DNA of 64,000 nucleotides from Euprymna scolopes. Its lineage: Eukaryota. The translations under genes were made by a program, and so were the position numbers. The DNA lies in the NCBI GenBank assembly GCA_053919585.1, contig CM132815.1. One strand, 5' to 3'. Every line of letters starts with the position of its first letter. Position 1 is the first letter of the stretch. This document shows, one piece after another, positions 35,463 to 60,914 of the stretch. The notes under the pieces were generated by a model that had not been told where the DNA came from, made no database searches, and saw only the letters and a program-made list of their open reading frames with translations.

Positions 35463-35651
35463 GTATTTATTTGCTTCCCCACTGAGCAAATTAGGCACAA
35501 GGCCGTTTTTTAATGTGGAGAGCGAAGGTGAAATGGGGACCAGCTATCCGGGGAGTAGGGGAGCTGGATAGTGATAATTGGTATGAAGGGTTGACCCTAC
35601 ATTGACCAATAACTTATATGCGGGGGCAACCCCACATATGGTCTTTGCTTG
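35463..35651 (-). mobile_element. Dispersed single copy of the 210-bp structured element (subtype A) arrayed at 51111-53195
   Basis: The reverse complement reads caagcaaagaccatatgtgggg...cggccttgtgcctaatttgctcagtggggaagcaaataaatac, collinear with the array unit. It lacks the 5' U2 fold-back hairpin. Confidence 0.9.
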
Positions 35652-35879
35652 ACACTTGTTGCCCAGGCCCCGAGGGGTGTAATCCGTTGAAAAGAATTAA
35701 AAAGAAAAACCGAAAAGAAAAAAAATACACCCTGTGTGTTTGTTTCTTTGTTTGTTTATGTATGTGTGCGTGTTAACAGACTTAACAATATTAGGAAATA
35801 ATAATTAACTGATTAAGTAATATTTAACGGTGAGACCTTTTAAAAGCAAATCGAAAAAAAAAAATGAAAAGTACCCCAC

Positions 35880-43652: not shown

Positions 43653-43729
43653 ATCCCTTCACAGAACTTGGCCTTCGGGACAAGATCAAAGTGCAATTCG
43701 GGACAAGATCAAAGTGTAGTATCTGTTCT
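43653..43729 (+). pseudogene. U2 snRNA 5' fragment / U2-derived target sequence with an internal 20-bp duplication
   Basis: aagatcaaagtgtagtatctgttct (43705-43729) matches invertebrate U2, including the GUAGUA branch-point recognition sequence. atcccttc and cttggcc-ttcg-ggacaag resemble the U2 5' end and stem-loop I. ttcgggacaagatcaaagtg is present twice (43674, 43697). No U2 3' half is seen. Confidence 0.85.
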
Positions 43730-44078
43730 CTGATACATACACAGCGATAGGCAGTGTTGTTCTGGCGACACATTCTCGTGCCCGGCGAGCTTGTTGGGTA
43801 GCGTTCTGTCCGCACCCCCACTTGGTCTGTCTTTCTCTGCTCTCCCCCCTCACGGGGGGATCCGAGCTGATAATTTACGACCTTCCCGCGAGGGAGGGTC
43901 GGAAACACTTTCTCTCTTCCCTCCACTAACTTCCCACTCCCTCTCTCAGTTCTATCTCCCCTCTTGCCGCCTTTGGCGCCACTTCTTTTTGGCGCCAAAG
44001 TCGGCTCCCACTTTGGACGCCGACTCCACGTCACTCATTTTGGTGAATTATACAGGGAAGAGAGAGCTTTTTTCAAAA

Positions 44079-47009
44079 ATGGACACCCCCAACCCGGGGA
44101 CCACCAATAGCGATACCCCCAGCCAGGGGGCTACCACAAGAAAAACTGCTCCCCAAGAGGACGACTCCCCAACAGGGGAAGCAAAAAGCAACGGGGCATA
44201 CCGCCCGGACACTAAACCGAAGGACGCCCCCCAGAAGGGAGAAAACTCACCAGCAGCTCCCCAAGAGGGCGACTCCCCACAAAGGGGAGAAAAAACAATG
44301 TTGGACGGGGCATCCCGTTCCGACAATAAAAATCAAGAGGCAGTAGCCCCAAAGGACGATAAGGGAGACAGTGCTCCCCAAGAGGGCGACTCCCCACAAA
44401 GGGGAGAAAAAACAATGTTGGACAGGGCATCCCGCTCTGACAACAAAAATCAAGAGGCAGTTGCCCCAAAGGACGATAAGAGAGACAGTGCTCCCCAGGA
44501 GGGCTACTGCCCCAAAAGGGGAGTAAATCAAGAAAACGAGGGAGCATACAGCCTAGACCCCCCCCAAAAAAAAACAAAAGGGGCAAAAGCTCCCAAGGAC
44601 AATAAAGAGGACAATGCTCCCCAGGAGGCCGACTCCCCAAAAAGGGAAATATTTCCTGGAAGAAGTATAGAGCAGGGAGAGTCGGTCCCAAAGGAAAGCG
44701 GAAAGGGAAATGCCCCTCAAAATAGCAACCCTTCCGCCAAGGAACAGCAAAAACAGTCCAACCTCACCAAAGATCCAACACCAACAAGAGGGTCGGCATG
44801 GGGGAAGACTGTAGAGAAGCAACTGTCCCCTCAAGAGTATAGAGACTTGTACTTGACCAAGTACAGACAATACATAGAGGGGGCAGAAATTAAACCAGTG
44901 CCAGGCGCTTGGGAGGCAATCGAAGACATAGTGCTCTCCCTCATCATCTCGGATATGCCGGAAAACCGCCTCCTAGGGATGAAAAAGGAAGACATGGCAG
45001 GGCTCCTACACAAGCTAAACATCCCGGTATTATACCTGTACCAGAGGAGCTACGCCATGTGGGACATCCTCCTACCCACCAAGGAAGATGCGGAGAGACT
45101 CTCCCTACAGGAAATTAAGTATGGGAGAATAAAACTAAAGCCCGAATACCAGGGCAGGACAAGGACCCGGGTGCAGGTATTCAATGTACCTATGCAAATA
45201 TCAGCAGAAATCCTGGGATCCTTCTTCACACAGTTCGGCGAGGTGGAAAAAATAACCCCAGTGCGGTCGAAAACCGGCATGCACTTGGGCAGCTACACTG
45301 TGGTCATGAGGCTTAAGAAAGAAGGCTTCCAGGCGATACCAGCACAGCTGACATTTAAGGAGGCAACTATGACAGTAGTAGTGGAGGGGCGTCGTCCGCA
45401 CTGCTGGTTCTGCCAAAAACAGGGTCACATGGCCAAGAGCTGCCCTCAAAGGTCAACTCCTACTCAAGTGACACTAAAGGCGGTCCCAACCTCTGAGACA
45501 GCACCAGTGTCCAAACAGGCTGTCACAACTCCTGCAACCGGAGCACCAACCCCAGCACCGAGGAAACCCAAAACTGTGCAGGAGGCCAAAGGGGAGGAAT
45601 GGATCACGGTAATGAGGCGGAAATGGAAGCCCACAATCCCATCTGCCACCGTCCCACAACCAACCCAACAACTGAGGCAGCAACAACAACAGCAGCCTCC
45701 ACAACAGCCGCAGCAACAGCCATGGCAGCAGACACAGCAGCAGCAGCCAAACCAGCCGTTGAACCAGCCGCAGCAACAACATCAGCTGCCGCGGCCAATG
45801 CCACAACCAATGCCACGAAAACAGCGGCAACAACAAAAACAGCAGCAGCAGCAACAGCCAGAACAGCAGCAGCAGCAACAAAAACGGCTGCAGCAACCAG
45901 AAAAGCAACAGCACCAACCGGAGAAACAACATCTAGAGGAGCAGCAACAACCAACGGTCCCCACACCAATTGAGACGGGGATCAAGCGAAGAAAACACTG
46001 CTCCTCTGAGGATGAATCTGCTAGTGAGAGGGAGAGGAACTCAACCTCACCACTCCCCGGTTCATTCAAAAGAATAAAAAAGAAAAGGAAAGGGGAAGAA
46101 AAGGCAGCCCCCACTCCCTGTGAGCATACACCACCTCTAACAACAACACAACCCACTTCCACCCCCATACCACATACTGCACCAACACTAGACACCGCAC
46201 TAACACCAACACCAACATCAGACACCGCACCAACACCAGACACTGCACCAACACCAGAAACTGCACCAACACCAACACCAGACACCGCACCAACACCAAC
46301 ACCAGACACCACACCAACACCAGACACCGCACCAACACCAACACCAACACCAGACACCACACCAACACCAGACACCGCACCAACACCAACACCAGACACC
46401 ACACAGACACTCGTCCCCACACCAATGCAAATTGAGCCGCCATCCCAGAAAGAAAAGAATGAACCCGGGAGGGGGAGAGACCCTTCAGATTCTCCCACTT
46501 ACGGACTCACTCCAACAGGGACTCTCGCCCTCGAAACGAGAGAGGAACTTTGTTTTGTAGACCCCCTGTCTGTGGCAATGGGCTTACCACACCGGCAGAG
46601 AAAAAATTTAAAACCTCTGCTGGACTTCCAACAGATAGGGGGAAAAGACGTTAATGTCCCCTCTAATTTCCCGGACGCCCCACGGCTAACAACTTTCGTC
46701 AGGCTTCCTGAGGCCTGCAAAACCAACGTGTGGACAATGCTGGAAGCCGCTGAAGGGGCTGGTCCGGGAATTGAACTGATTAGGAAAAATGACCCTTCCC
46801 TTGAGGAACTCGCAAAACAATGCAAGGGAAGGGTCCCAGTGTTGGTCCATCCGTCACTCTATAGGGCCCTTAAATTGACTTACCCTTTGAATGTCGGCGG
46901 CATTGTGAGAGAAGGTCAGGACATGAAAAACCTGACCACCTTGAGCATTGCACACAACGTCGGTGTCCTTTCCCCGGCTGACTTCGGAGCTGAGTGTAAC
47001 ACACCTTAA
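44079..47009 (+). CDS. LINE ORF1 nucleic-acid-binding protein, 976 aa from first ATG
   Basis: Intact frame with an RRM-like segment RVQVFNVPMQISAEILGSFFTQFGEV and zinc knuckle CWFCQKQGHMAKSC (45402-45443). It also has 39-aa N-terminal repeats, a polyQ tract, basic KRIKKKRK and DTAPTP repeats. Confidence 0.88.
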   Translation: MDTPNPGTTNSDTPSQGATTRKTAPQEDDSPTGEAKSNGAYRPDTKPKDAPQKGENSPAAPQEGDSPQRGEKTMLDGASRSDNKNQEAVAPKDDKGDSAPQEGDSPQRGEKTMLDRASRSDNKNQEAVAPKDDKRDSAPQEGYCPKRGVNQENEGAYSLDPPQKKTKGAKAPKDNKEDNAPQEADSPKREIFPGRSIEQGESVPKESGKGNAPQNSNPSAKEQQKQSNLTKDPTPTRGSAWGKTVEKQLSPQEYRDLYLTKYRQYIEGAEIKPVPGAWEAIEDIVLSLIISDMPENRLLGMKKEDMAGLLHKLNIPVLYLYQRSYAMWDILLPTKEDAERLSLQEIKYGRIKLKPEYQGRTRTRVQVFNVPMQISAEILGSFFTQFGEVEKITPVRSKTGMHLGSYTVVMRLKKEGFQAIPAQLTFKEATMTVVVEGRRPHCWFCQKQGHMAKSCPQRSTPTQVTLKAVPTSETAPVSKQAVTTPATGAPTPAPRKPKTVQEAKGEEWITVMRRKWKPTIPSATVPQPTQQLRQQQQQQPPQQPQQQPWQQTQQQQPNQPLNQPQQQHQLPRPMPQPMPRKQRQQQKQQQQQQPEQQQQQQKRLQQPEKQQHQPEKQHLEEQQQPTVPTPIETGIKRRKHCSSEDESASERERNSTSPLPGSFKRIKKKRKGEEKAAPTPCEHTPPLTTTQPTSTPIPHTAPTLDTALTPTPTSDTAPTPDTAPTPETAPTPTPDTAPTPTPDTTPTPDTAPTPTPTPDTTPTPDTAPTPTPDTTQTLVPTPMQIEPPSQKEKNEPGRGRDPSDSPTYGLTPTGTLALETREELCFVDPLSVAMGLPHRQRKNLKPLLDFQQIGGKDVNVPSNFPDAPRLTTFVRLPEACKTNVWTMLEAAEGAGPGIELIRKNDPSLEELAKQCKGRVPVLVHPSLYRALKLTYPLNVGGIVREGQDMKNLTTLSIAHNVGVLSPADFGAECNTP

Positions 47010-47019
47010 GGTAGGTACC

Positions 47020-50000
47020 ATGGCTTTGAATTTGGCTAGTCTGAATGCGAGGGGCTTGAGATCATCGGGCCGGGCGGCTCGCGACCGGCACGACCTCTTG
47101 TCCCTGGGAGTGGATGTTGCTGCGATTCAGGAGACGCATTTCGTTTCCTCTGTGGACTGTCAGGTGCTGGCCCGAGACTTTGAGGTTTTCTCAGCATATG
47201 GCAGCCCGCGGGGGAAGGGAGTTTCCGTGTTGGTTAAACGTACCCTGTCGGCGACGGTCGACGTTGTCCATAGAGATGCGGTGGGTAGGCTGGTTGTGGC
47301 CGATGTTGCCGTAAAAGATTCTGTGTTTCGGGTGATTGCGGTTCATGCGCCCAGCACCGCTCGTGAGAGGGTCTCATTCTTCAGTCAGCTTGACGCGTTT
47401 GTAGATTGTCGGAAGCGGGTAGTGCTAATGGGGGATTGGAATTCCATCTTAGACCCCGACATAGATAAGGTAGGAGGCGGAGCTAGAGGATCGGAGAGGT
47501 GCGAGTCCAGCCTGGCTGATCTGATGGCTAGATGCGGTCTGGTCGACAGGTTTCGGTTTGAGCATCCAGGGCGGGAGATGTGGACGTGGACCAATAGTGT
47601 TTCCTCCTATCCAAATACTTATTTGGACAGGATGTTAGTTAGGAAAGGCGAAGTAGACTTCTTATCTTGTCCCACGTTCACTTGGCTAGGCCAGACGGAC
47701 CATAAATTAGTTATGGCCCGGCTGAAGCTAGGAAATAGGCCTAAGTTAGCAGGGTACTGGAAGTTAAACACCTCCCTTCTGGAGATACAAGACTTCCAAG
47801 ATCAGTTAAGAGAATTGATTAAAAAGGCACTAGTGGGGGCGGTTACCGGGAGTAAGTGGTGGTTAGGTCTCAAAGCCAAGATCAGAAGCTTCTCCGTCAA
47901 GTATGCGCAGCGCCTCGCACTAGATAAGGCCAAGACGAAGAAGAAGCTAGAGCAGAAACTAGCCCAGGCTACGGGGGAGGGTGATAGGGTTAGTCAGGAA
48001 CTAGCTAAGCAGGACCTTCTACGCGAGACTAGCGAGCGTTACGAAGGCCAAGTAGTTAGAGCTAGGCTTAGAAAGATAGGCAACGAAGCAGTCAATTCTG
48101 ATGCAGACGTGCGCCGTGAGGTTTCTAGGCGTGGCTCGGACAAATACATTGCAAAAATCAAACATCCGAATGGACGCACCCTGGAATCGACTCGAGAGAT
48201 CTGCGAGGGGTTTCGAGAACATTTCGAGGAGCGTTTTACGCAGCAGCCCGATCTTCCGGTCCTTGAGTTTAGCGACTATTTGGCCGACTCTCCCCGCCTC
48301 GAGGCGGCTAGAGCGGCTGGTTGCGAGGGCCGGGTGACGGAGCAGGCGGTCTTTACTGCGCTGAAGCAGGTCAGCTGTGACAGATCGCCAGGACTTGATG
48401 GTCTGCCATACGAACTGTACTTGAGGCTGTCGCCCATGTTTCTGCCTCTTCTGACGGATATGTTCAACCATTGGTTTGCTCAGGGATCCATCCCAGGTGA
48501 CCAAGGGAGTGATCACATTGCTGAAGAAAGGTGACGGGCATGGAGGGGAAGAGTTAGACGACTACAGGCCCATAACTCTGCTAAACACAGTTGAAGATTT
48601 TGGCCAAGGTCCTGTCGAATCGGCTGCAGGTTGTTATCGACGAGTTGGTTGAACCGGAACAGAACTACGCTGTGAAGGGGAGATCGATTCAGAACAACTT
48701 GCACCTGATCCGCATGATCCTAGAGGGGGAATAGATGACGACACGGAAGCCGCGCTGATAAACTTAGATCAGTCCAAAGCTTTCGATAGGGTCGACCATC
48801 GTTTCCTGGCATCTGTCTTAGAGGCCGCCGGTTTTAAACCGGACTTTTGCAAGTGGATCTCCATAATGTATCGACAGCCCATGGCTGTCGTGCAAGTCAA
48901 CGGGAAGCGCTCGAAACCCTTTGTTATCTCTCGGTCGGTTCGTCAGGGTTGTCCGCTGTCGCCCCTGCTTTATGTCCTGGCTTTGGAGCCTCTTCTCCGC
49001 AAGCTGAGACATGGGGAGGCAAATTCGGCCCTGCGCGGAATGGCTCTGCCTGGCGGCTCAGCTGCCAAGGTATCCGCGTTCGCCGATGATGTCACGATCT
49101 TCGTGTCGGGCTTCAGAGACATTGAGGTCGTGTCGGAGGCACTCACACAGTACGAAAGAATTACAGGGGCCAAGATAAACAAGTCGGTAGGACTGCGGTT
49201 GGGCGCATGGAGTGGCAACGCAAACCTCCCTGCGCCTTTCAGCTGGACAGATGGCCCGGTCCGGATCCTCGGCGTGTGGTTCGGACCGGGTCTCCAGCTT
49301 GACAAGAATTGGTTGGAGGTACGGTCAAAGGTGGAGGCTGCAGTCAATTCGTGGCTTCCTAGGAAACTTTCCTTAAAGGGTAGAGCTGAGGCGTGCGCCA
49401 CTTACGTCTTTCCTCTCATCCTTTACCGACTGGCCGTACTTCCCCTGCCTGCACAACACCTAAAAGCTCTTGTCGAACTCTTGTCCTCGCTCCTTTGGGA
49501 CAGAGGAAGACACTGGGTGAGCAGACAGGTCTGTATTCAACGTCCGTGTGAGGGAGGCTTGGGAATGCCGGACTTGAAGTGTCATCGAGATGCTGAGAGG
49601 CTGGCCTTCCTGAGCCACTATATGCAGGAGGACCAACCGTGGCACCCCGTGGTTACTGCCGCCTTCCCCGACCTCGTTCTCGACCCTTCCATCGAGAGCC
49701 GTCGCAGGCCGCGGGGAGAATCTGCCTACATGAAAGAGTGCCGAGCCGCGCTAAAACGACTACCAAGGTCCAGTGACCTTGTGACTGCTACCCGTAGGGA
49801 ACTCCACAGGGATCTAGTGAAGGGGGCCGCTGACGACCCGCTATGCGCGCGTTTGAGGTGGCAGCAGAGTGAGATCCGCTCCGCGTGGAGCTGGGCGCCA
49901 GGTTCGAGTCATCTGAACAATTCGGAGTTCTCTCTGACCTGGCGATTGGCCCTAAATGCACTTCCACTCAACAACATACAATGCAGTTCTGGGTTTCTGG

Positions 50001-50443
50001 AGTCGCCTGATTGTCCCCGTTGTGGGACAACGGCTGTGGAAACTACGGATCACGCTTTCTTCGATTGCCGCGAACTCCGCCAGTACTGGTCGTATGTCAG
50101 TGGGGTGACGGCTCGCATCGATCCTGAGCATCCTCGCCCAATTACTGTATCCAATGTTGTGGACAACGTGAGGCCGCCGTGGGACCGGGAAAGACAAATG
50201 GTCTACGTTACGATTCTGGCCGTGGCGAGAATGGTGATTTGGACGTCGCGTCTGCAAGGTTGCCGGGGGGTGTTGTCTTTTTCTGATCAAGATCTGATCG
50301 CGTTCTTTAAACACCAACTACGGGTGAAGATCAGATGTGATAGAAGAAGGCTGCATCGCGCGGCATTTGACAGAAGATGGATACATGTGGCAAGTCTGTG
50401 TGTACGAAGAGGAGCCAAATTTGAATACGTGTTCCCCGCCTAG
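47020..50443 (+). pseudogene. LINE ORF2 (AP-endonuclease, reverse transcriptase, CCHC) with three frameshifts near 48497, 48590 and 48730
   Basis: APE motifs SLNARGL, IQETH, MGDWN, YLDRML and TDH. RT motifs SPGLDGLP, YRPITLLN, LDQSKAFDRVDH, RQGCPLSPLLY and FADD. C-terminal CPRC...ETTDHAFFDC. The ATG follows the ORF1 stop after a 10-nt spacer. Confidence 0.93.
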
Positions 50444-51110
50444 GTGTGGAACGCGTAGTTCTGTAAAGTTAAATTAAACAAGTAGTCTCTCAGCTAGCTG
50501 AGTGTGTGTTCCATCCCTCCCCGATTAGGAAGCCTCCAAGATCCCCATCCCCTCTTACCTGCAATTTTTGTTTTCACCCCTTCCTCTAAATTTTACCCAT
50601 CTTGGAGAAAAAGAAATACAAACTAACCTCCATCCCTTACCCACAAAATTTTCTTTTCTCCATTCACCCCCATCTAGAGGGCATCCCCACCTAGAGACTG
50701 ACCCGCAGAAGCGAGGTTCCTTTTACAAACCTAGTGGAACGGGCAGTCTATCAACTAGACGGGGTTGGGAGGGTCCTACTAATCACCTTTTGTTTTTTCT
50801 TCCCCCTCCCTCGACACAAATGAATTATTGTTACCATTTTATTGTTATCTTTTTTGTTTTTACACGTCAATAAAAAATGTTTTAAAAATTGGGAGTTACT
50901 AGGACGTCCCCCAATATGAAAGGGTGAATGCGGTATTATGGTGAAAGAAGATACTAGCTGGGAGAAACTTTTGACTTTGTTTAGTTCTGGAGTGACAAGG
51001 ATGACCAACGACCCCCAAAATCCCCCTTTTGAGTTGGCCATGTGCCTAAGTTTTTTGTTCACCGTTGATTTTTTTCTGTATTTTTTTAACATGAATAAAA
51101 GATTTAATAT

Positions 51111-53195
51111 ATCAAAGTGTAGTATCTGTTCCGGCAGATACTGCAAGCAAAGACCATATGTGGGGGCAACCCCACATATAAGACCTTGGTCAATGTAGGG
51201 GCAACCCTTCATACCAATTGTCACTATCCAGCTCCCCTACTCCCCGGGGAGTTGGTCCCCAGTTCCCCTTCACTCCTCACTTTAAAAATCGGCCTTGTGC
51301 CTAATTTGCTCGGTGGGGGAGCAAATAAATACCATCTGTTCCGGCAGATACTGCAAGCTATGACTAGCTATGACTAGCTATGACTAGAAAAGACCAGATG
51401 TGGGGGCAACCCCACATGCCTGACCTTTAACCAGCTCCCATTTCCCACCTCTCGGGAGCTGGTCCCCTTTTTCCCTTCCCCCTCCCTTCACTCCTCACAT
51501 TAAAAATTGGCCTTGTGCCTAATTTGCTCGGTGGGGGAGCAAATAAATACCATCTGTTCCGGCAGATACTGCAAGCAAGGACCATATGTGGGGGCGTCCC
51601 CACATATAAGACCTTGGTCAATGTAGGGGCAACCCTTCATACCAATTGTCACTATCCAGCTCCCCTGCTCCCCGGGGAGTTGGTCCCCATTTCCCCTTCA
51701 CTCCTCACATTAAAAATCGGCCTTGTGCCTAATTTGCTCGGTGGGGTAGCAAATAAATACCATCTGTTCCGGCAGATACTGCAAGCAAAGACCATATGCG
51801 GGGGCGACCCCACATATAAGACCTTGATCAATGTAGGGGCAACCCTTCATACCAATTGTCACTATCCATCTCCCCTACTCCCCGGGGAGTTGGTTCCCAT
51901 TTCCCCTTCACTCCTCACATTAAAAATCGGCCTTGTGCCTTATTTGCTCGGTGGGGTAGCAAATAAATACCATCTGTTCCGGCAGATACTGCAAGCAAAG
52001 ACCATATGTGGGGGCGACCCCACATATAAGACCTTGGTCAATGTAGGGGCAACCCTTCAGACCAATTGTCACTATCCAGCTCCCCTACTCCCCGGGGAGC
52101 TGGTCCCCATTTCCCCTTCACTCCTCACATTAAAAATCGGCCTTGTGCCTAATTTGCTCGGTGGTGTAGCAAATAAATACCATCTGTTCCGGCAGACACT
52201 GCAAGCAAAGACCCTATGTGGGGGCGACCCCAGAGATAAGACCTTGGTCAATGGAGGGGCAACCCTTCATACCAATTGTCAATATCCAGCTCCCCTACTC
52301 CCCCGGGGAGCTGGTCCCCATTTCCCCTTCACTCCTCACATTAAAAATCGGCCTTGTGCCTAATTTGCTCGGTGGGGGAGCAAATAAATACCGTATCTGT
52401 TCCGGCAGATACTGCAAGCAAAGACCCTATGTGGGGGCAACCCCACAGATAAGACCTTGGTCAATGGAGGGGCAACCCTTCATACCAATTGTCACTATCC
52501 AGCTCCCCTACTCCCTGGGGAGTTGGTCCCCATTTCCCTTTCACTCCTCACATTAAAAATCGGCCTTGTGCCTAATTTGCTCAGTGGGGCGAGCAAATAA
52601 ATACCTCAAAGTGTAGTATCTGTTCCGGCAGATGCTGCAAGCTATGACTAGCTATGACTAACAAAGACCAGATGTGGGGGCAACCCCACATGCCTGACCA
52701 TTAACCAGCTCCCATTTCCCACCTCTCGGGAGCTGGTCCCCTTTTTCCCTTCCCCCTCCCTTCACTCCTCACATTAAAAATCGGCCTTGTGCCTAATTTG
52801 CTCGGTGGGGGAGCAAATAAATACCATCTGTTCCGGCAGATACTGCAAGCAAAGACCATATGTGGGGGCGACACCATATATAAGACCTTGGTCAATGTAG
52901 GGGCAACCCTTCATACCAATTGTCACTACCCTACTCCCCGGGGAGTTGGTCCCCATTTCCCCTTCACTCCTCACTTTAAAAATCGGCCTTGTGCCTAATT
53001 TGCTCAATGGGGGAGCAAATAAATACCTCAAAGTGTAGTATCTGTACTTCAGATGCTGCACTTCTATTTCTTGTTCACTTTCGGTGGAGGAGAAATCCTT
53101 CACGACTGAGACAATTTTTATTTTTGTACCTTTTCTCCACGTTAAAAAACGACCCTGGTGTCTAACTCTGTCCCGTGGGGAGGCATAGTAAATAG
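51111..53195 (+). mobile_element. Tandem array of 10 short structured non-coding elements (order A B A A A A A B A C), probable non-autonomous partners of the Tx1 LINE
   Basis: Unit starts at 51111/51124, 51334(B), 51552, 51762, 51972, 52182, 52393, 52606(B), 52826 and 53028(C). The A period is 210 bp. Each unit begins with U2-derived (tcaaagtgtagt)atctgt and ends in ggccttgtgcctaa-hairpin-taaata (degenerate in C). Confidence 0.8.
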
Positions 53196-53540
53196 GTACA
53201 TTAATTGCCTCTGTTAAACTATTATGATAAAAAATTACATTCCTTGTGTTCTGAAATAGTTCCTTCTGATTGGACAAGAGATTTCTCTCTGAGTAATCAA
53301 CAAGCAATTATTATTTATTTTTTATGGCGGATGGAATAAAAAGGTTTTGTTTGTTTTCGTTTTTATGTGGTATCTGGCCAGTCAACACAACAAGGGACCT
53401 ACTCCTCATTTTTAATCGGTGTTTATTAGAGTGAAACGTATTCCTAGATTTGTCTTGTTCAATGAACAATTATATCAAGAGCTGGTATTTTATTAATTAG
53501 TTTAGCAACAAGTATTTCTTCTCTTACAGTTTCAGTTAAC

Positions 53541-53756
53541 TACACGGGCGGTAAAAAGAAAGTACGCACTTGTAATTTTTTTCAAAAACTGCAAATGTAA
53601 GCCAAATTTAATGTAACTGTTTAAACAAACTATACCTCATTTGATTGGACTTATAGAGAAATAAAAGACGAATCAAATGAGGTATAGGTTGTTTAAACAG
53701 TTACATAAAATTTTGAAAAAATTACAAGTGAGGACTTTCTTTTTGCCGGCACTGTA
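53541..53756. mobile_element. Tc1/mariner-type MITE, almost fully palindromic
   Basis: Left end ta-cacgggcggtaaaaagaaagtacgcacttgtaattttt versus right-end reverse complement ta-cagtgccggcaaaaagaaagtcctcacttgtaattttt. Inner arms atgtaactgtttaaacaa.ctatacctcatttgatt are also inverted. TA at both ends. Confidence 0.9.
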
Positions 53757-53924: not shown

Positions 53925-56900
53925 AAATTAGAAACCTCACAAGAAAAAAAGGATAGTTGTCGTACCTGAACAATGTGTGATCAATACAAATTTTTACATA
54001 TCCAAATTATGAATGTACAAGGTGAGTTCAATTAAAAACTTAACACCAGCAAAGTATGGATCGACTGGTAGGCGTACCTGAAAACTGTAAGATCAATTCA
54101 AAATCTTACTTATCCAAAGTATATATCAACAGTTAAGCTAACCGAGAAAATGTAAAATCAACTGAAAACCTTTACGTGAACAAAGTAGGGATCAACTGGT
54201 ACGCATACATGGACAATGCAAGGTAAATTAAAATCTTGAATAGTTAAAATATAGAACAACTCGTAGGCATACCTGTACAAAGAAAGATCAATTAAAAACA
54301 TCATATAAGCAAAGTATGAATGAACTGGTAGGCGTACCTGAAAACGTAAGAAAAATTAAAAACAAAACATAAACAAATTATAGATCGACTAGTAGGCGTA
54401 CTTGAACAATATAAGTAAAATTAAAGACATCAACTGAACAAAGTATACATTAACAAATAGGCTCACTTGACCAATGTAAGATCAATTAAAAACATCACAT
54501 CAAGAAAGTATAGATCGATAGGTAGGCGTACCTGAATAATATGAGATAAATTACAAAGATAGCACGAACAAAGTATTTATAAATTGGTAGGTGTATCTGA
54601 ATAACGTAAAATAAATTAATAACACCACATAACCAAAGTATGAACACTTGTATAAGTATGGATCAACGAGTAGGCGTAACTTAATACTATAAGATAAATT
54701 GACAAAATCACGTGCACAAAAAATAGATTAACTGAGAGGCGTACTTGAACACTATCACATTAATTAAAAACATCACGTGAACACAGCATTGATCAACTGG
54801 TAGGCAACGAAAACAACGAAAGATAATTTAAGAACCTCACATGAACGAAGTATTGATCAACTGATAGGTATATCTAGTCACCGTAAGATAAATTTAAAAA
54901 AGAATACATGAATAAAGTATGGATCAACTGGTAGGCGTACCTGAATAGTGTAAGATCAATTGAAAATTTTAAATTTCCAAACTATAAATCAACTTGTAGT
55001 TATACCTGAACAACGTAAGGTAAATAAAAAAAACATCAAATGAACCCCGTATGGTTTGCCTGATAGGCGTACCTCAACAATGATAATTAATGTGGATAAA
55101 CCGGTAGGCGTATCTAAACAATGTAAGGTGAATTAAAAACATCACATGCCTTAATAACGAAGGAAAAATTAAAAACATCACACGAACAATGTACACATCG
55201 ACTAGTAGGCGACCCTGAACACTGTAAGATAAATTAAAAACATCACTTGAACAAAATATGGATCAACTGGTATGTGTACCTGAACAATGCAACATCAATA
55301 AAAAGATTTAACATATAAAAAGTATGAATCGACTTGTAGGCATACTTGAACAACGTAAGATAAATTAAAAACCTCACACGAACGAAGTATGGACCAACAG
55401 GAAGTCGTACTTGAACACTGCCAGACAAATTTATGAGAGCACATGGACAAAGTAAGGAAAACTGGGTGGCATACTTGAAAAACGTAGAATCAATAAACAA
55501 AATTTAACATATTAAAAGTATAAATTAACTGGTATGTGTACTTGAAAACGTATAATAAATTAAAAACATCACACGAACAATGTATAAATCGACTGATAGG
55601 CGTATCTGAACACGTAATATAAATAAAATACATCACATGAACAAAGTATTGCTCAATTGGTAGGCGTATCTGAACATAGTAAGATAAATTTAAATGATTA
55701 CACAAACAAAGAATTGATCAACTGATAAATGGCAGAAACATTAGTGGATGACCGCCAATCTGTAGTGGAATGGAGACAAAAATGGATGGTCACATTCAAT
55801 GCTGCCAGGACTAAACTTGTTTCCTTCAATGACTACAAGAAACCTTCTCTACCACCAATAGCAATGGCCGAAGACTTTATCTGAAAGTATATATTTTAAA
55901 CTTCTCGGCCTAACGTTCACAGGACACATGAGTCGGAACAACTACATTGAGAGCATTGCCAGGACTGTTGCGAAAAAGGTAGGTTCTCTCTACCGTGCAA
56001 GAAAGCTACAAACGCCCGAAAGTGTCCTGTACCTCTATAAGGCCACCATTCACTCATGTATGGAGTATTGTTGTCATTTTTGGGCTGGTGCGTCTGCCAC
56101 TAGTCTCTCGCTCCTAGACAAGGTTCAAAAGAGAGTCGCAAACCTGATAGGTCCTGAACTGTCATTTAAGCTTCAGTTTCTGTCCCATCGACGATATGTA
56201 GCATCCCTCTGTCTGTTCTACAAGTACTTTAACGGTAAATGCTCCGACGAACTGCAAGCACTTGTACCCCCTTGACGTAAATACCCCCGACAAATCCGAC
56301 AAGCAGCAAAATCCCACCACTTCACAGTTGAGATCCCTAGATGTAAGAGAGCCTTCTACTTCAGTAGTTTCTTCCCCAGAACGGCTAGACTTTGGAATTC
56401 TCCTCCGGGTTTTTGCTTCCCCAACTGTACTGCCATGCAGAAGTTCAAGTGTAACGTGAACCGACATCTTGCTGCCCAACTCCCCACATAGTACCCCTGA
56501 TAGTAGCTCCCTGCATCAACGTGGCAATGTGCCTTGTTTGGGGTGAAAATGTAATAATAAAAAAGCGTACCTTAACACTATATGATAAATTATTAACATC
56601 AACTAAAGAAAAATAGACAAAATGGTATACGTAATTGAACAACGTTAGATAAATTATAAACCTCACAAGAACGAAGTATGATTCAACTGGTAGGCGTACC
56701 TGAACAGTGTAAGCTCAATTAAAAAGTTTTCATATAAAAAATATGGATAAAATGGTGGACATTCTGGAACAATGTAAGATAAATTAAAAAGACATCGCAC
56801 GAACAAAGTATTGATCAACTGATAGGCGTACCTGAAGAGTGTCAGATAAATGAAAAACATACCATATACAAAAGATAGATCGATAGGTAGGCTCACCTGA

Positions 56901-57170
56901 ACACTGTAAGATAAATAAAAACATCACACGAACAAAAGTTAGATCGACTGAGAGGCGTATCTGAACACTGTAAGATAGATTAAGAACATCACATAAACGA
57001 AGTATGGATCAACTGGTAGGCGTGCCTGAACAACGTAGAATAATATAAAAACATCTCATGAACGAAATAAGGATCATCTGGTAGGTGTACGTGAAGAACG
57101 TAAGATAAATTAATTACATCACATAAACAAAGCATGAATAATCTGGTAGGCGAATAAGTACACTGTAAAA
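53925..57170. repeat. Diverged ~64-65 bp tandem repeat (old part of second satellite), interrupted by a LINE fragment
   Basis: Recurring gatcaactggtaggcgtacctgaac..tgtaagataaattaaaaacatcac; agg core at 56824, 56889, 56953 and 57018. Confidence 0.9.
55728..56564 (+). mobile_element. 5'-truncated CR1/L2-group LINE inserted in a satellite monomer
   Basis: Peptides KWMVTFNAARTKL, KKVGSLYRARK, CMEYCCHFWAG, LSHRRYVASLCLFYKY and SSFFPRTARLWNS. It ends in taataataaaaaa. The flanks rejoin as gatcaactgata|gcgtacc. Confidence 0.88.
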
Positions 57171-60100
57171 TACATTTAAAAGATCACATAAACGAATATG
57201 GATCAACTAGTAGGCGTACCTAAACAGTATAAAAACATTTCAAAGATCATATGAACGAATATGGATCAACTGGTAGGTGTACCTAAACAGTATAAAAACA
57301 TTTAAAAGATCATATGAACGAATATGGATCAACTAGTAGGTGTATCTAAACAGTATAAAACATTTAAAAGATCATATGAACGAATATGGATCAACTAGTA
57401 GGCTTAACTAAACAGTATAAAAACATTTAAAAGATCATATGAACGAATATGGATAAACTAGTAGGTGTACCTAAACAGTATAAAAACATTTAAAAGATCA
57501 CATGAACGAATATGGATCAACTGGTAGGTGTACCTAAACAGTATAAAAACATTTAAAAGATCATATGAACGAATATGGATCAAATAGTAGGTGTACCTAA
57601 ACAGTATACAAATATTTAAAAGATCATATGAACGAATATGGATCAACTAGTAGGCTCACCTAAACAGTATAAAAACATTTAAAAGATCATATGAACGAAT
57701 ATGGATCAACTAGTAGGCGTATCTAAACAGTATAAAAACATTTAAAAGATCATATGAACGAATATGGATCAACTAGTAGGTGTATCTAAACAATATAAAA
57801 ACATTTAAAAGATCATATGAACGAATATGAATCAACTAGTAGGTGTATCTAAACAGTATAAAAACATTTAAAAGATCATATGAACAAATACGGATCAACT
57901 AGTAGGTGTATCTAAACAGTATAAAGACATTTAAAAGATCATATGAACGAATATGGATCAACTGGTAGGCGTACCTAAACTATATAAAAACATTTAAAAG
58001 ATCATATGAACGAATATGGATCAAATAGTAGGCGTACCTAAACAGTATAAAAACATTTAAAAGATCATATGAACGAATATGGATCAACTAGTAGGCGTAC
58101 CTAAACAGTATAAAACATTTAAAAGATTATATGAACGAATATGAATCAAATAGTAGGCTCACCTAAACAGTATAAAAACATTTAAAAGATCATATGAACG
58201 AATATGGATCAACTAGTAGGTGTATCTGAACAGTATAAAAACATTTAAAAGATCATATGAACTAATACGGATCAACTAGTAGGTGTATCTAAACAGTATA
58301 AAGATATTTAAAAGATCATATAAACGAATATGGATCAACTGGTAGGCGTACCTAAACAGTATAAAAACATTTAAAAGATCATATGAACGAATATGAATCA
58401 ACTAGTAGGCGTATCTAAAAAGTATAAAAACATTTAAAAGATCATATGAACGAATATAGATCAACTAGTAGGTGTATCTAAACAATATAAAAACATTTAA
58501 AAGATCATATGAACGAATATGAATCAACTAGTAGGTGTATCTAAACAGTATAAAAACATTTAAAAGATAATATGAACGAATATGGATCAACTAGTAGGTG
58601 TATCTAAACAGTATAAAACATTTAAAAGATCATATGAACGAATATGGATCAACTAGTAGGCGTACCTAAACAGTATAAAAACATTTAAAAGATCACATGA
58701 ACGAATATGGATCAACTAGTGGGCTAATCTAAATAGTATAAAAACATTTAAAAGATTATATGAACGAATATGAATCAACTAGCAGGTGTATCTTAACAGT
58801 ATAAAACATTTAAAAGATCATATGAACGAATATGGATCAACTAGTAGGCGTATCTAAACAATATAAAAACATTTAAAAGATCACATGAACGAATATGGAT
58901 CAACTAGTAGGCTAACCTAAACAGTATAAAAACATTTAAAAGATTATATGAACGAATATGAATCAACTAGTAGGCGTATCTAAACAGTATAAAAACATTT
59001 AAAAGATCATATGAACGAATATGGATCAACTGGTAGGCGTACCTAAACAGTATAAAAACATTTAAAAGATCATACGAACGAATATGAATCAACTAGTAAG
59101 CGTATCTAAATAGTATAAAAACATTTCAAAGATCATATGAACGAATATGGATCAACTAGTAGGCGTATCTAAATAGTATAAAACATTTAAAAGATCATAT
59201 GAACGAATATGAATCAACTAGTAGGCGTATCTAAACAATATAAAAACATTTAAAAGATCATATGAACGAATATGAATCAACTAGTAGGCTTACCTAAACA
59301 GTATAAAAACATTTAAAAGATCATATGAACGAATATGAATCAACTAGTAGGTGTATCTAATCATTATAAAAACATTTAAAAGATCATATGAACGAATATG
59401 GATCAACTAGTAGGCGTATCTAAACAGTATAAAAACATTTAAAAGATCATTTGAACGAATATGAATCAACTAGTAGGCGTATCTAAATAGTATAAAACAT
59501 TTAAAAGATCATATGAACGAATATGGATCAACTAGTAGGCGTACCTAAACAGTATAAAAACATTTAAAAGATCATTTGAACGAATATGAATCAACTAGTA
59601 GGTGTATCTAATCAGTATAAAAACATTTAAAAGATCATATGAACGAATATGAATCAACTAGTAGGCTTACCTAAACAGTATAAAAACATTTAAAAGATCA
59701 TATGAACGAATATGGATCAACTAGTAGGCGTACCTAAACAGTATAAAAACATTTAAAAGATCATATGAACGAATATGGATCAACTAGTAGGCGTACCTAA
59801 ACAGTATAAAAACATTTAAAAGATCATATGAACGAATATGGATCAACTAGTAGGCGTACCTAAACAGTATAAAAATATTTAAAAGATCATATGAACGAAT
59901 ATGGATCAACTAGTAGGCGTACCTAAACAGTATAAAAACATTTAAAAGATCATATGAACGAATATGGATCAACTAGCAGGTGTATCTAAACAGTATAAAA
60001 ACATTTAAAAGATCATATGAACGAATATTGATCAACTAGTAGGCGTACCTAATCAGTATAAAAACATTTAAAAGATCATATGAACGAATATGGATCAACT

Positions 60101-60400
60101 AGTAGGCGTACCTAATTAGTATAAAAACATTTAAAAGATCATATGAACTAATATGGATCAACTAGTAGGCGTACCTAATTAGTATAAAAACATTTAAAAG
60201 ATCATATGAACGAATATGGATCAACTAGTAGGCGTATCTAAACAATATAAAAACATTTAAAAGATCATATGAACGAATATGGATCAACTAGTAGGCTTAC
60301 CTAAACAGTATAAAAACATTTAAAAGATCATATGAACTAATATGGATCAACTAGTAGGCGTACCTAAACAGTATAAAAACATTTAAAAGATCATTTGAAC
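57170..60400. repeat. Homogeneous 63-bp satellite, ~51 copies (aaacatttaaaagatcatatgaacgaatatggatcaactagtaggcgtacctaaacagtataa)
   Basis: Period 63 (tatgaac at 59701 and 59764). Confidence 0.97.
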
Positions 60401-60914
60401 AAATATGTATATGCATATACATATGTGTATATATAGTATATATAGCTACTTGTAGGTAAATATATTGACATAAAATGGAATAAGATATTAAATCTACAAA
60501 GACAAAAATAGTTGGTAAAAATAAAATAAATAAATAAAAAACTTGAACCAAAGAGCTCGATAAATAAATATCATTTTCCAAAATTAATAAATAAAATCTT
60601 CAACTAAACAGCTAGATAAATAAATTCCATTGCCAAAATAATTAGAAGAAAGCACTTTAGAATTTCAGTATCGTAAAAAAATAATAGATAAACAGCATCA
60701 TGTGTGTGCGCCATATATTGTCTAACTGATTCTGTTTTAAGCTGTTTGTCTATTTTCCTCTATGTATATTTCACTGTCTAACAGTCTGATTTGGCGCTAT
60801 CAGATCAGGCTCTATAAAGATATTGGTTGCCTGACCTAAAATGCACTAACCATTGATGTTATTGTTTTTCCCTTTGTAAAATTAAAAATAAGAACAACAA
60901 TTTTCCTCACAGAA

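What the first reader, a model, noticed from the sequence alone, without database searches (positions are those of the whole stretch)
51034..51110. LINE 3' end and all short units share one 3' architecture: 16-nt motif, hairpin, A-rich signal, no poly(A)
LINE: ttggccatgtgcctaa (51034-51049), then a hairpin ttttgttca.../...tgaataaaa. Unit B: ttggccttgtgcctaa (51507-51522, 15/16 identical); A units read tcggccttgtgcctaa; both continue atttgctc-loop-gagcaaat-aaata. Unit C: acgaccctggtgtctaa, a hairpin, then taaata. The stem sequences differ but the fold is kept. Shared 3' ends are the established hallmark of stringent LINE-SINE pairs, so this is the likely ORF2 recognition element (inference).
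Basis: partly seen in the sequence, partly recalled or inferred. Interest (0 to 1): 0.8.

Follow-up and report, generated by a model that had tools for sequence, protein, structure and literature searches.

The report
Conserved LINE–SINE 3' RNA tail
A young U2-snRNA-targeting retrotransposon and the short parasitic elements beside it end in the same small RNA module (a fixed 11-14-base motif, a variable hairpin and an AAAUA end, with no poly(A)). The module is kept in distant relatives in other species, so it is very probably the handle by which the element's reverse transcriptase picks its template.

Summary
GGCC(N)TGTGCCTAA lies at 51036-51049 in the LINE and in all nine A/B units; there are 11 hits where 0.06 are expected by chance. 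Unit C carries the variant GAC…GTC.

At least nine LINE tail families in this genome carry the same motif. Two of them sit in genuine U2 genes. Three LINE relatives from other assemblies (RT 43-45% identical) carry it too, and at least one has a non-U2 target. In a 12-family 3'UTR alignment it is the best-kept block.

In 16 of 19 tails the lowest-energy fold is the same. A 3-bp mini-hairpin forms inside the motif, a long stem starts 1-5 nt after it, and 4-9 unpaired nt (AAAUA…) remain at the end. Stems differ between families but match their own partner arm (permutation p<5e-5), with compensatory changes. None of 83 SINE tails ends in an A-run.

- The A/B/D SINE tail derives from a different LINE family ("c") than the window LINE.
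- The conserved module also includes upstream blocks.
- The short units are dispersed U2-headed SINEs.

This is a new member of a known kind. Function is untested.

The parts
43653..43728 (+). U2-snRNA-like head upstream of the LINE. It ends in the target tcaaagtgtagtatctgttc (43709-43728) and contains an internal 23-nt duplication.
   Evidence: the last 19 nt are identical to nt 28-46 of this genome's real U2.
43729..51110 (+). Keno-like (Tx1/L1-type) APE LINE, about 7.38 kb. ORF1 is 43791-47009. ORF2 is in two frames in this copy: 46948-48534 (APE) and 48866-50443 (RT plus zf-RVT).
   Evidence: ORFs. (Exo_endo_phos 1e-12, RVT_1 5e-10, zf-RVT 9e-7). (at least 40 copies with 99% identical 3' ends, 1256 candidates).
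50929..50944 (+). Conserved 3'UTR block 1, TGnGGTATTnTGGTnA
   Evidence: alignment A4 of 12 LINE families, including 3 from other assemblies.
50997..51027 (+). Conserved block 2 (GATGACC) followed by a C-rich tract
   Evidence: A similar C-rich tract precedes the motif in the SINEs.
51034..51049 (+). 16-nt motif. The core is GGCCATGTGCC (51036-51046), which forms a 3-bp mini-hairpin GGC/GCC, followed by TAA.
51047..51106 (+). LINE tail hairpin: a U-rich 5' arm, a 3' arm holding AAUAAA, and a large loop
   Evidence: z -3.4; 0 of 300 shuffles reach it.
51107..51110 (+). Unpaired 3' terminal nucleotides of the LINE. No poly(A) follows.
51112..51131 (+). Downstream copy of the U2-like target (target-site duplication)
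51124..53027 (+). Head-to-tail array of nine A/B SINE units (210 and 218 bp). Each ends in GGCCTTGTGCCTAA + ATTTGCTC/GAGCAAAT hairpin + AAATACC. Motifs start at 51291, 51509, 51719, 51929, 52139, 52350, 52562, 52783 and 52985.
   Evidence: (tandem repeat finder).
53028..53196 (+). Unit C, the last unit of the array. Its tail (53150-53196) has GAC…GUC in the mini-hairpin, an imperfect stem and a UAAAUAGG end.
   Evidence: C-type units are always distal and are followed by unique DNA.
35470..35690 (-). Solitary A-type SINE with the same tail, lying in non-U2 DNA

Best explanation
The last 45-110 nt of these elements form a cis-acting RNA module. The module is inherited within a lineage of Tx1/L1-type, APE-encoding LINEs and has been copied by their non-autonomous SINEs.

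It has three parts:
- an almost invariant GGCCUUGUGCC that folds into a 3-bp mini-hairpin;
- immediately after it, a stem whose sequence is free but whose pairing is kept;
- 4-9 unpaired nucleotides containing AAAUA at the very 3' end.

Inferred mechanism: the LINE's ORF2 protein binds this module on its own RNA. It then starts target-primed reverse transcription exactly at the unpaired end, without needing a poly(A) tail. SINEs that carry the module are mobilised in trans to the same targets.

Shown here: the anatomy, conservation, covariation, absence of poly(A) and shared targets. Inferred: protein binding and priming.
For: (1) The motif is a conserved island.
- TGTGCCTAA is the only 9-nt invariant block in the last 400 nt of four LINE families.
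- GGCCTTGTGCC is nearly invariant in 12 families, including three from other assemblies with RT 43-45% identical.

(2) It does not depend on the target.
- In L083 a LINE and an adjacent SINE both carry the module, and both are followed by ACCCCTCAAAATC, which is not U2.
- In this genome, SINE F carries it and sits in CCCCACATAT inside an A/B SINE.

(3) The fold is the same in 16 of 19 tail families. The stem starts 1-5 nt after the mini-hairpin and ends 4-9 nt from the 3' end. Shuffles that keep local composition reach this with P 0-0.13 per family.

(4) There is covariation.
- Cognate arms pair at -8.1 against -4.3 kcal/mol for non-cognate arms, p<5e-5.
- The mini-hairpin changes from G-C to A-U in unit C and in L084.
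- A stem pair flips from A-U to U-A between SINE F and its counterpart in L083.
- On the covariance-model alignment, 91% of cells pair against 82% in shuffles and 14-45% with slid partners. Nine of 11 pairs change on both sides.

(5) A model trained on four SINE tails finds untrained LINE tails of other species at the right place (E 7e-5, 0.004, 0.006).

(6) SINE families A, B and D keep the tail (93-96% identical) while their bodies differ (61-69%).

(7) 3' junctions are precise and lack poly(A).

(8) By established knowledge, stringent-type LINEs recognise a 3' stem-loop that their SINEs share (Kajikawa and Okada 2002, as cited in PMC4494074; PMC3472496).
Against: - No functional test was possible.
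- Folding energy alone is not significant for the short tails (z -1.0 to +0.9).
- Three of 19 tails do not give the fold as their lowest-energy structure: two single old family-c copies and the L083 SINE.
- The window LINE shares only about 17 nt with the A/B units, so this particular LINE-SINE pairing is not shown.
- The pair counts come from an alignment fitted to the model.
- LINE families in one genome could exchange tails, which would inflate apparent conservation. The three other-assembly cases argue against this, but their organisms are unknown and at least one is probably a fairly close relative.
- RNA reads gave no information on transcript 3' ends.
Confidence: 0.68

Rival explanations
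1. The module acts in RNA 3'-end formation, stability or ORF1-protein packaging rather than in recognition by the reverse transcriptase. For example, AAUAAA in the 3' arm might direct cleavage and polyadenylation just downstream in the target, or the hairpin might protect a tail-less RNA.
For: AAUAAA or a near copy lies in or just after the 3' arm in most LINE families. The elements have no poly(A) of their own, so something else must define or protect the RNA end.
Against: - Three tails have only (U)AAAUA and no AAUAAA: U2b, unit C and the L083 SINE.
- The hexamer lies only 3-8 nt from the element end.
- No poly(A) loose ends appeared among the best-supported read ends, though this is weak evidence.
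- This reading does not explain why SINEs with unrelated bodies keep exactly this tail and share the LINE's targets.
Confidence: 0.14
2. The motif is a mimic of U2 stem-loop I. The tail plus the downstream target would rebuild a U2-like 5' region, either in DNA (regenerating the endonuclease's recognition site and so driving tandem arrays) or in RNA.
For: - The A-unit version TCGGCCTTGTGCCTAA matches U2 nt 9-24 at 14 of 16 positions. By my own estimate, the chance of that anywhere in the 193-nt U2 is about 5e-5.
- The hairpin would bring the motif next to the target-derived sequence.
- Arrays are common.
Against: - The core motif is kept in relatives with non-U2 targets, where the U2-like CTAA becomes CAAA or CACA.
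- The core alone matches U2 at 9 of 11 positions, which is near chance level.
- Motif-to-junction spacing varies from 29 to 99 nt, which argues against a fixed DNA recognition site.
- The target-site duplication alone explains arrays.
Confidence: 0.1
3. The shared tail is passive shared ancestry: SINE tails were copied from a LINE tail and the similarity has no present function.
For: The SINE tail is clearly LINE-derived (34-35 nt match to family c). A, B and D share one tail by descent.
Against: The sequence flanking the motif is unalignable between LINE families, while the motif is invariant at 43-45% RT protein identity. Compensatory changes keep both helices.
Confidence: 0.06

Closest known systems
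Keno, the U2 snRNA gene-targeting LINEs of the Tx1 clade (Kojima and Fujiwara 2004, as described in PMC4494074 and PMC4640811)
   Same: APE endonuclease plus RT. Insertion at a fixed place in the 5' part of U2 with precise 3' junctions. Two related families here sit in genuine U2 genes of the 764-bp array.
   Different: - Keno is reported from vertebrates, lancelet and Hydra. This genome appears to be a mollusc's: runs filed as mollusc metagenome hold the stretch.
- Most copies here lie in U2-derived SINE heads rather than in U2 genes. The 19-mer target occurs 57,549 times.
- No conserved 3' module is described in the papers I could read.
- Clade membership by RT phylogeny was not tested.
SINEU with Tx1-Mar in crocodilians (Kojima 2015, PMC4494074)
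   Same: SINEs with U2-derived heads. Keno-related LINEs share the target preference. The LINEs also sit behind snRNA-derived 5' sequence.
   Different: SINEU elements have poly(A) tails, and no LINE sharing the SINEU-1 3' terminus was found (PMC4494074). Here the SINEs have no poly(A) and carry a LINE-derived structured tail.
Stringent-type LINE/SINE pairs such as UnaL2/UnaSINE1, and the monocot L1 lineage with ZmSINE2/3 (PMC3472496)
   Same: A short conserved 3' end shared by LINE and SINE. A stem-loop with variable stem, compensatory changes and a few conserved nucleotides beside it.
   Different: - A different LINE lineage.
- The conserved part here is a separate mini-hairpin 5' of the variable stem.
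- No terminal repeat or poly(A).
- The elements are target-specific.
3'UTR recognition in target-specific R1-clade LINEs SART1 and R1Bm (Osanai et al. 2004, cited in PMC3472496; remaining details from my own knowledge)
   Same: Target-specific APE LINEs whose precise start of reverse transcription depends on 3'UTR structure.
   Different: A different clade and different motifs. SART1 ends in poly(A).

Membership tests
Stringent-type LINE-SINE 3' tail pair | The SINE 3' end is similar in sequence to the 3' end of a LINE in the same genome | tested here: met
   About 17 nt are shared with the window LINE and 34-35 nt with LINE family c. The same holds for the LINE and SINE in L083.
Stringent-type LINE-SINE 3' tail pair | A conserved stem-loop at the 3' end with compensatory changes | tested here: met
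   Energies of the short tails alone are not significant.
Stringent-type LINE-SINE 3' tail pair | The tail is required for retrotransposition or RT binding | not testable with these tools
   This needs a cell-based or in vitro assay.
Keno / Tx1 clade | APE-type endonuclease N-terminal to the RT | tested here: met
   Pfam Exo_endo_phos 1.1e-12, RVT_1 4.9e-10, zf-RVT 8.6e-7.
Keno / Tx1 clade | Site-specific insertion in U2 snRNA genes | tested here: met
   - 29 of 30 LINE copies are followed by the U2 target at one offset.
- Related families U2a and U2b interrupt real U2 genes after nt 46-47, with duplications of nt 22-47 and nt 1-47.
- Real U2 scores 161 bits against Rfam.
Keno / Tx1 clade | The RT groups with Tx1/Keno in a phylogeny | not tested
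SINEU | A head derived from U1 or U2 snRNA | tested here: met
   Heads such as CTTGGCCTTTTGGCCAAGATCAAAGTGTAGTATCTGTTC correspond to U2 nt 6-46. The Rfam U2 model scores 28-31 bits on whole SINEs, below the gathering score of 46.
SINEU | A 3' poly(A) tail | tested here: not met
   None of 83 tails is followed by an A-run.

The most novel reading that the evidence does not exclude
The 3' motif is a functional mimic of U2 stem-loop I. With the variable hairpin looping out, the element's 3' end plus the adjoining target reads like the first 46 nt of U2. The same protein surface that recognises the U2 target would then also recognise the template RNA, or each insertion would rebuild a preferred target. 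That would explain the head-to-tail arrays and the 57,549 copies of the target.
Probability: 0.1. Interest if true: 0.75.

Novelty: new member of a known kind. Interest (0 to 1): 0.5.

Why it matters
How Tx1/Keno-type LINEs choose their RNA template is not known. SINEU, the only snRNA-headed SINEs described so far, were linked to Tx1 LINEs through shared targets alone.

This locus supplies a compact candidate recognition element of about 45 nt. Natural variation already marks what matters: an invariant mini-hairpin, a stem free in sequence but fixed in position, and an AAAUA end. The element occurs in at least nine LINE tail families, at least five SINE tail types and three other assemblies.

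That makes binding, target-primed reverse transcription and trans-mobilisation experiments easy to design. It also gives a search model for annotating such elements in large mollusc genomes, where they are very abundant.

Tried and rejected
- Searching the genome with Rfam U2 failed twice. A U2 35-mer pattern was used instead.
Thirty target-centred loci were used instead.
Families d, e and f seen were therefore not analysed.
- MAFFT misaligns the hairpin arms. The covariance model also truncates long-loop LINE tails. Arm complementarity was therefore tested by script.
- Similarity of the motif to U2 stem-loop IV (7 of 8 positions) is at chance level and was dropped.
- Unit C is not a whole U2 derivative. 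Only the head matches U2.
- An RNA-read joint suggested a "mini" SINE made of the LINE's last 230 nt. It turned out to be a single 5'-truncated copy at C22:78262167.
- RNA reads show SINEs on both strands and no informative 3' ends.
- Most close protein hits lie in one very large ENA assembly whose DNA could not be fetched.

Full report
WHAT IS THERE

The window holds a 7.38-kb LINE at 43729-51110 on the + strand. It has an ORF1 and an ORF2 with an APE endonuclease, an RT and a zf-RVT domain. In this copy ORF2 lies in two frames.

The LINE is flanked on both sides by tcaaagtgtagtatctgttc, at 43709-43728 and 51112-51131. The last 19 nt of that sequence are identical to nt 28-46 of this genome's own U2 snRNA. 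The real U2 genes form a 764-bp tandem array on contig C9 and score 161 bits against Rfam U2.

THE LINE AND ITS TARGET

The LINE is young and abundant. Forty scored 3' ends are 99% identical, out of 1256 candidates. In 29 of 30 fetched copies the same U2-like sequence follows at the same offset.

What lies beyond that target varies between copies:
- another LINE (tandem arrays with a 7.39-kb period);
- A, B or D units;
- a related LINE;
- a C unit, which is always last and is followed by unique DNA.

The 19-mer target occurs 57,549 times in the 5.9-Gb genome, far more often than U2 genes (about 2,130 hits). In an unconditioned sample of 31 occurrences, about 19 are the U2-like heads of solitary SINEs sitting in unique DNA. 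A/B/C/D are therefore dispersed SINEs with U2-derived heads that also pile up in arrays. The window holds a solitary one at 35470-35690 on the minus strand. The Rfam U2 model scores these SINEs at only 28-31 bits, so only the head is U2-derived.

IS THE MOTIF MORE THAN CHANCE, AND IS IT IN RELATIVES?

In the window the motif occurs 11 times against 0.06 expected. Genome-wide, TGCCTAA followed 32-61 nt later by the target occurs 10,477 times, and 0 times for the reversed control.

A, B and D share one homologous tail, so they count as a single observation. The informative comparison is between LINE families.

- Two LINEs that interrupt genuine U2 genes carry the motif 72-76 nt before their 3' ends. 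U2a has no blastn match to the window LINE. U2b is 73% identical to it in the ORF.
- Families E, E2, E3, X1, L057 and the diverse family c also carry it.
- In a MAFFT alignment of the last 400 nt of four families, TGTGCCTAA is the only invariant 9-mer.
- Among the 12 element-to-element junctions in the unconditioned sample, six have the motif intact, five have it with one or two copy-specific mutations or a small deletion, and one lacks it.

OTHER SPECIES

Protein search with the RT half found only relatives at 61% identity or less. DNA could be fetched for three of them, at 43-45% identity.

- L082 is a tandem LINE in ENA assembly ERZ26052130. It ends in GGCCTTGTGCC-ACA, a TTTGTAC/GTACAA stem and AAATAAT.
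- L083 comes from ERZ26051807 and holds a LINE followed by a SINE of about 400 nt. Both end in GGCCTTGTGCC-AAA, a stem (ATTTTTC/GAAAAT in the LINE, ATTGCTG/CAGCAAT in the SINE) and AAATAT(T/C)T. Both are followed by ACCCCTCAAAATC, a non-U2 target. This is an independent LINE-SINE pair with the same architecture.
- L084 is a Tara Oceans metagenome contig. It has GACCTTGTGTC, a stem, and AAATACT.

A 12-family alignment shows four conserved blocks: TGnGGTATTnTGGTnA, GATGACC plus a C-rich tract, the motif, and a terminal AATAAA-like sequence. No Rfam family matches the LINE 3'UTR.

STRUCTURE

RNAfold gives one architecture in 16 of 19 tail families. The motif forms a GGC-N5/6-GCC mini-hairpin. A stem begins 1-5 nt after it, and 4-9 nt stay unpaired at the 3' end.

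Shuffles that keep the U-rich and A-rich halves reach the observed helix with P 0-0.13 per family.

Energy z-scores are strong for the long LINE tails (-3.4, -6.5, -2.8) but not for the short tails (-1.3 to +0.9). Stability alone therefore proves nothing for the SINEs.

The covariation evidence carries more weight.
- Each family's 5' arm pairs best with its own 3' arm: mean -8.1 against -4.3 kcal/mol, and none of 20,000 permutations is as good.
- Stem pair 2 is U-A in the SINEs but G-C in X1, L057 and U2b.
- Pair 10 is A-U in E, U-G in E2 and U-A in U2a.
- The mini-hairpin's middle pair is G-C in most families but A-U in unit C and L084.
- SINE F of this genome and its counterpart in L083 differ by an A-U to U-A flip.

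A covariance model built from four SINE tails found the untrained tails of L082, L083 and L084 at E 7e-5, 0.004 and 0.006. On the resulting alignment 91% of cells pair, against 82% in shuffles (0 of 500 as high) and 14-45% with slid partners. Nine of 11 pairs change on both sides. That alignment is fitted to the model and contains many decayed SINE copies, so I treat it as supporting evidence only.

WHICH LINE DRIVES THE SINEs?

The A/B/D tail aligns with LINE family c over 34-35 nt (…cctcacttt…ggccttgtgcctaatttg). It aligns with the window LINE over only about 17 nt.

SINE copies are 92-96% identical pairwise, whereas LINE1 3' ends are 99% identical to the window copy. The tail was therefore most likely copied from a family-c-like LINE.

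Whether the window LINE can also use these tails depends on whether the shared features are enough: the mini-hairpin, the position of the stem and the AAAUA end. That question is open.

MECHANISM

I read the module as the template-recognition and priming element of this LINE lineage. ORF2 protein binds it and starts reverse transcription at the unpaired end. This explains three things:
- the precise 3' junctions without poly(A) (0 of 83 tails followed by an A-run);
- the retention of the tail by SINEs whose bodies are unrelated;
- the shared targets.

The principle matches that of stringent-type LINEs (PMC3472496; Kajikawa and Okada 2002, as cited in PMC4494074).

The place of the 3' junction within U2 differs by family: nt 1 for U2b, about nt 22 for U2a and E, and about nt 27-28 for LINE1 and family c. 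A/B/D SINE tails abut the target at nt 27-28, or at nt 39 in the tandem units. The 5' junction is always after nt 46-47. I did not resolve why.

THE U2-MIMIC IDEA

The A-unit motif matches U2 nt 9-24 at 14 of 16 positions, and the hairpin would bring it next to the target. However, relatives with non-U2 targets keep the core and change the U2-like CTAA. The core alone matches U2 at 9 of 11 positions. Spacing to the junction varies from 29 to 99 nt. I give this reading about 0.1.

COMPARISON AND NOVELTY

The LINE behaves like Keno, the U2-targeting Tx1-clade family (PMC4494074, PMC4640811). Its clade membership by RT phylogeny was not tested.

The SINEs resemble SINEU in having U2 heads and a Keno-related partner. 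SINEU elements, however, have poly(A) tails, and no LINE-derived tail was found for them (PMC4494074).

LINE-SINE tail sharing with a covarying stem-loop is a well-known principle. This is a new instance of it in a new lineage, and it comes with unusually rich natural variation.

Other notes from this scan on the same window (s1-254967, s1-254991, s1-255006) describe the same array. I checked their points as listed under earlier findings.

Noticed in passing
G000:C9:168.87-168.97 Mb (loci L034-L042): The real U2 genes form a 764-bp tandem array. It is interrupted by at least two different LINE families at the same site. U2a duplicates U2 nt 22-47 (26 bp). U2b duplicates nt 1-47, or ends exactly at U2 nt 1. 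Two further gaps of about 7.9 kb probably hold the same kind of insertion.
   Followed up: partly
L025 (own genome) and L083:5460-5865: A further SINE family (F, about 400 nt) has the same tail but a different target. It sits in CCCCACATAT inside the palindromic part of an A/B SINE body. Its counterpart in another assembly sits at ACCCCTCAAAATC beside its LINE.
   Followed up: partly
window 51124-53027: Spacing between units is of three kinds: 8 nt (ATCTGTTC), 20 nt (TCAAAGTGTAGTATCTGTTC), or a full U2-like head of 40-57 nt. Stem-loop I of the head varies in a compensatory way (GGCC-TTTT-GGCC, GGCC-TTCG-GGCC, and others). How the 8-nt form arises is unexplained.
   Followed up: no
window about 2000-34984: A 55-bp satellite, 96% matches in the part scanned, with flat composition (GC 0.29, GC skew +0.47) across about 33 kb.
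   Followed up: no
window 54030-60407: A satellite of 63-65 bp, in part with a 130-bp higher-order period.
   Followed up: no
window 53607-53710: A near-perfect 100-nt inverted repeat that gives sub-threshold hits to several microRNA precursor models on both strands. It is probably a foldback or MITE-like repeat rather than a microRNA.
   Followed up: no
window 43680-43716: The U2-like head upstream of the LINE contains a 23-nt internal duplication (gggacaagatcaaagtg … gggacaagatcaaagtg).
   Followed up: no
window 44256-46425: ORF1 of the LINE is full of short tandem repeats (periods of 117, 48, 24, 21 and 18 bp). Its only Pfam match is a weak zinc knuckle.
   Followed up: no
G000:C7:96046603-96069094: At least four LINE copies lie in a head-to-tail array with a 7.39-kb period, separated only by the 21-nt target.
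   Followed up: no
G000:C22:78262167: A single 5'-truncated LINE copy (the last 230 nt or so), joined directly to the target, is well represented in a poly(A) RNA run, with reads in one orientation only.
   Followed up: partly
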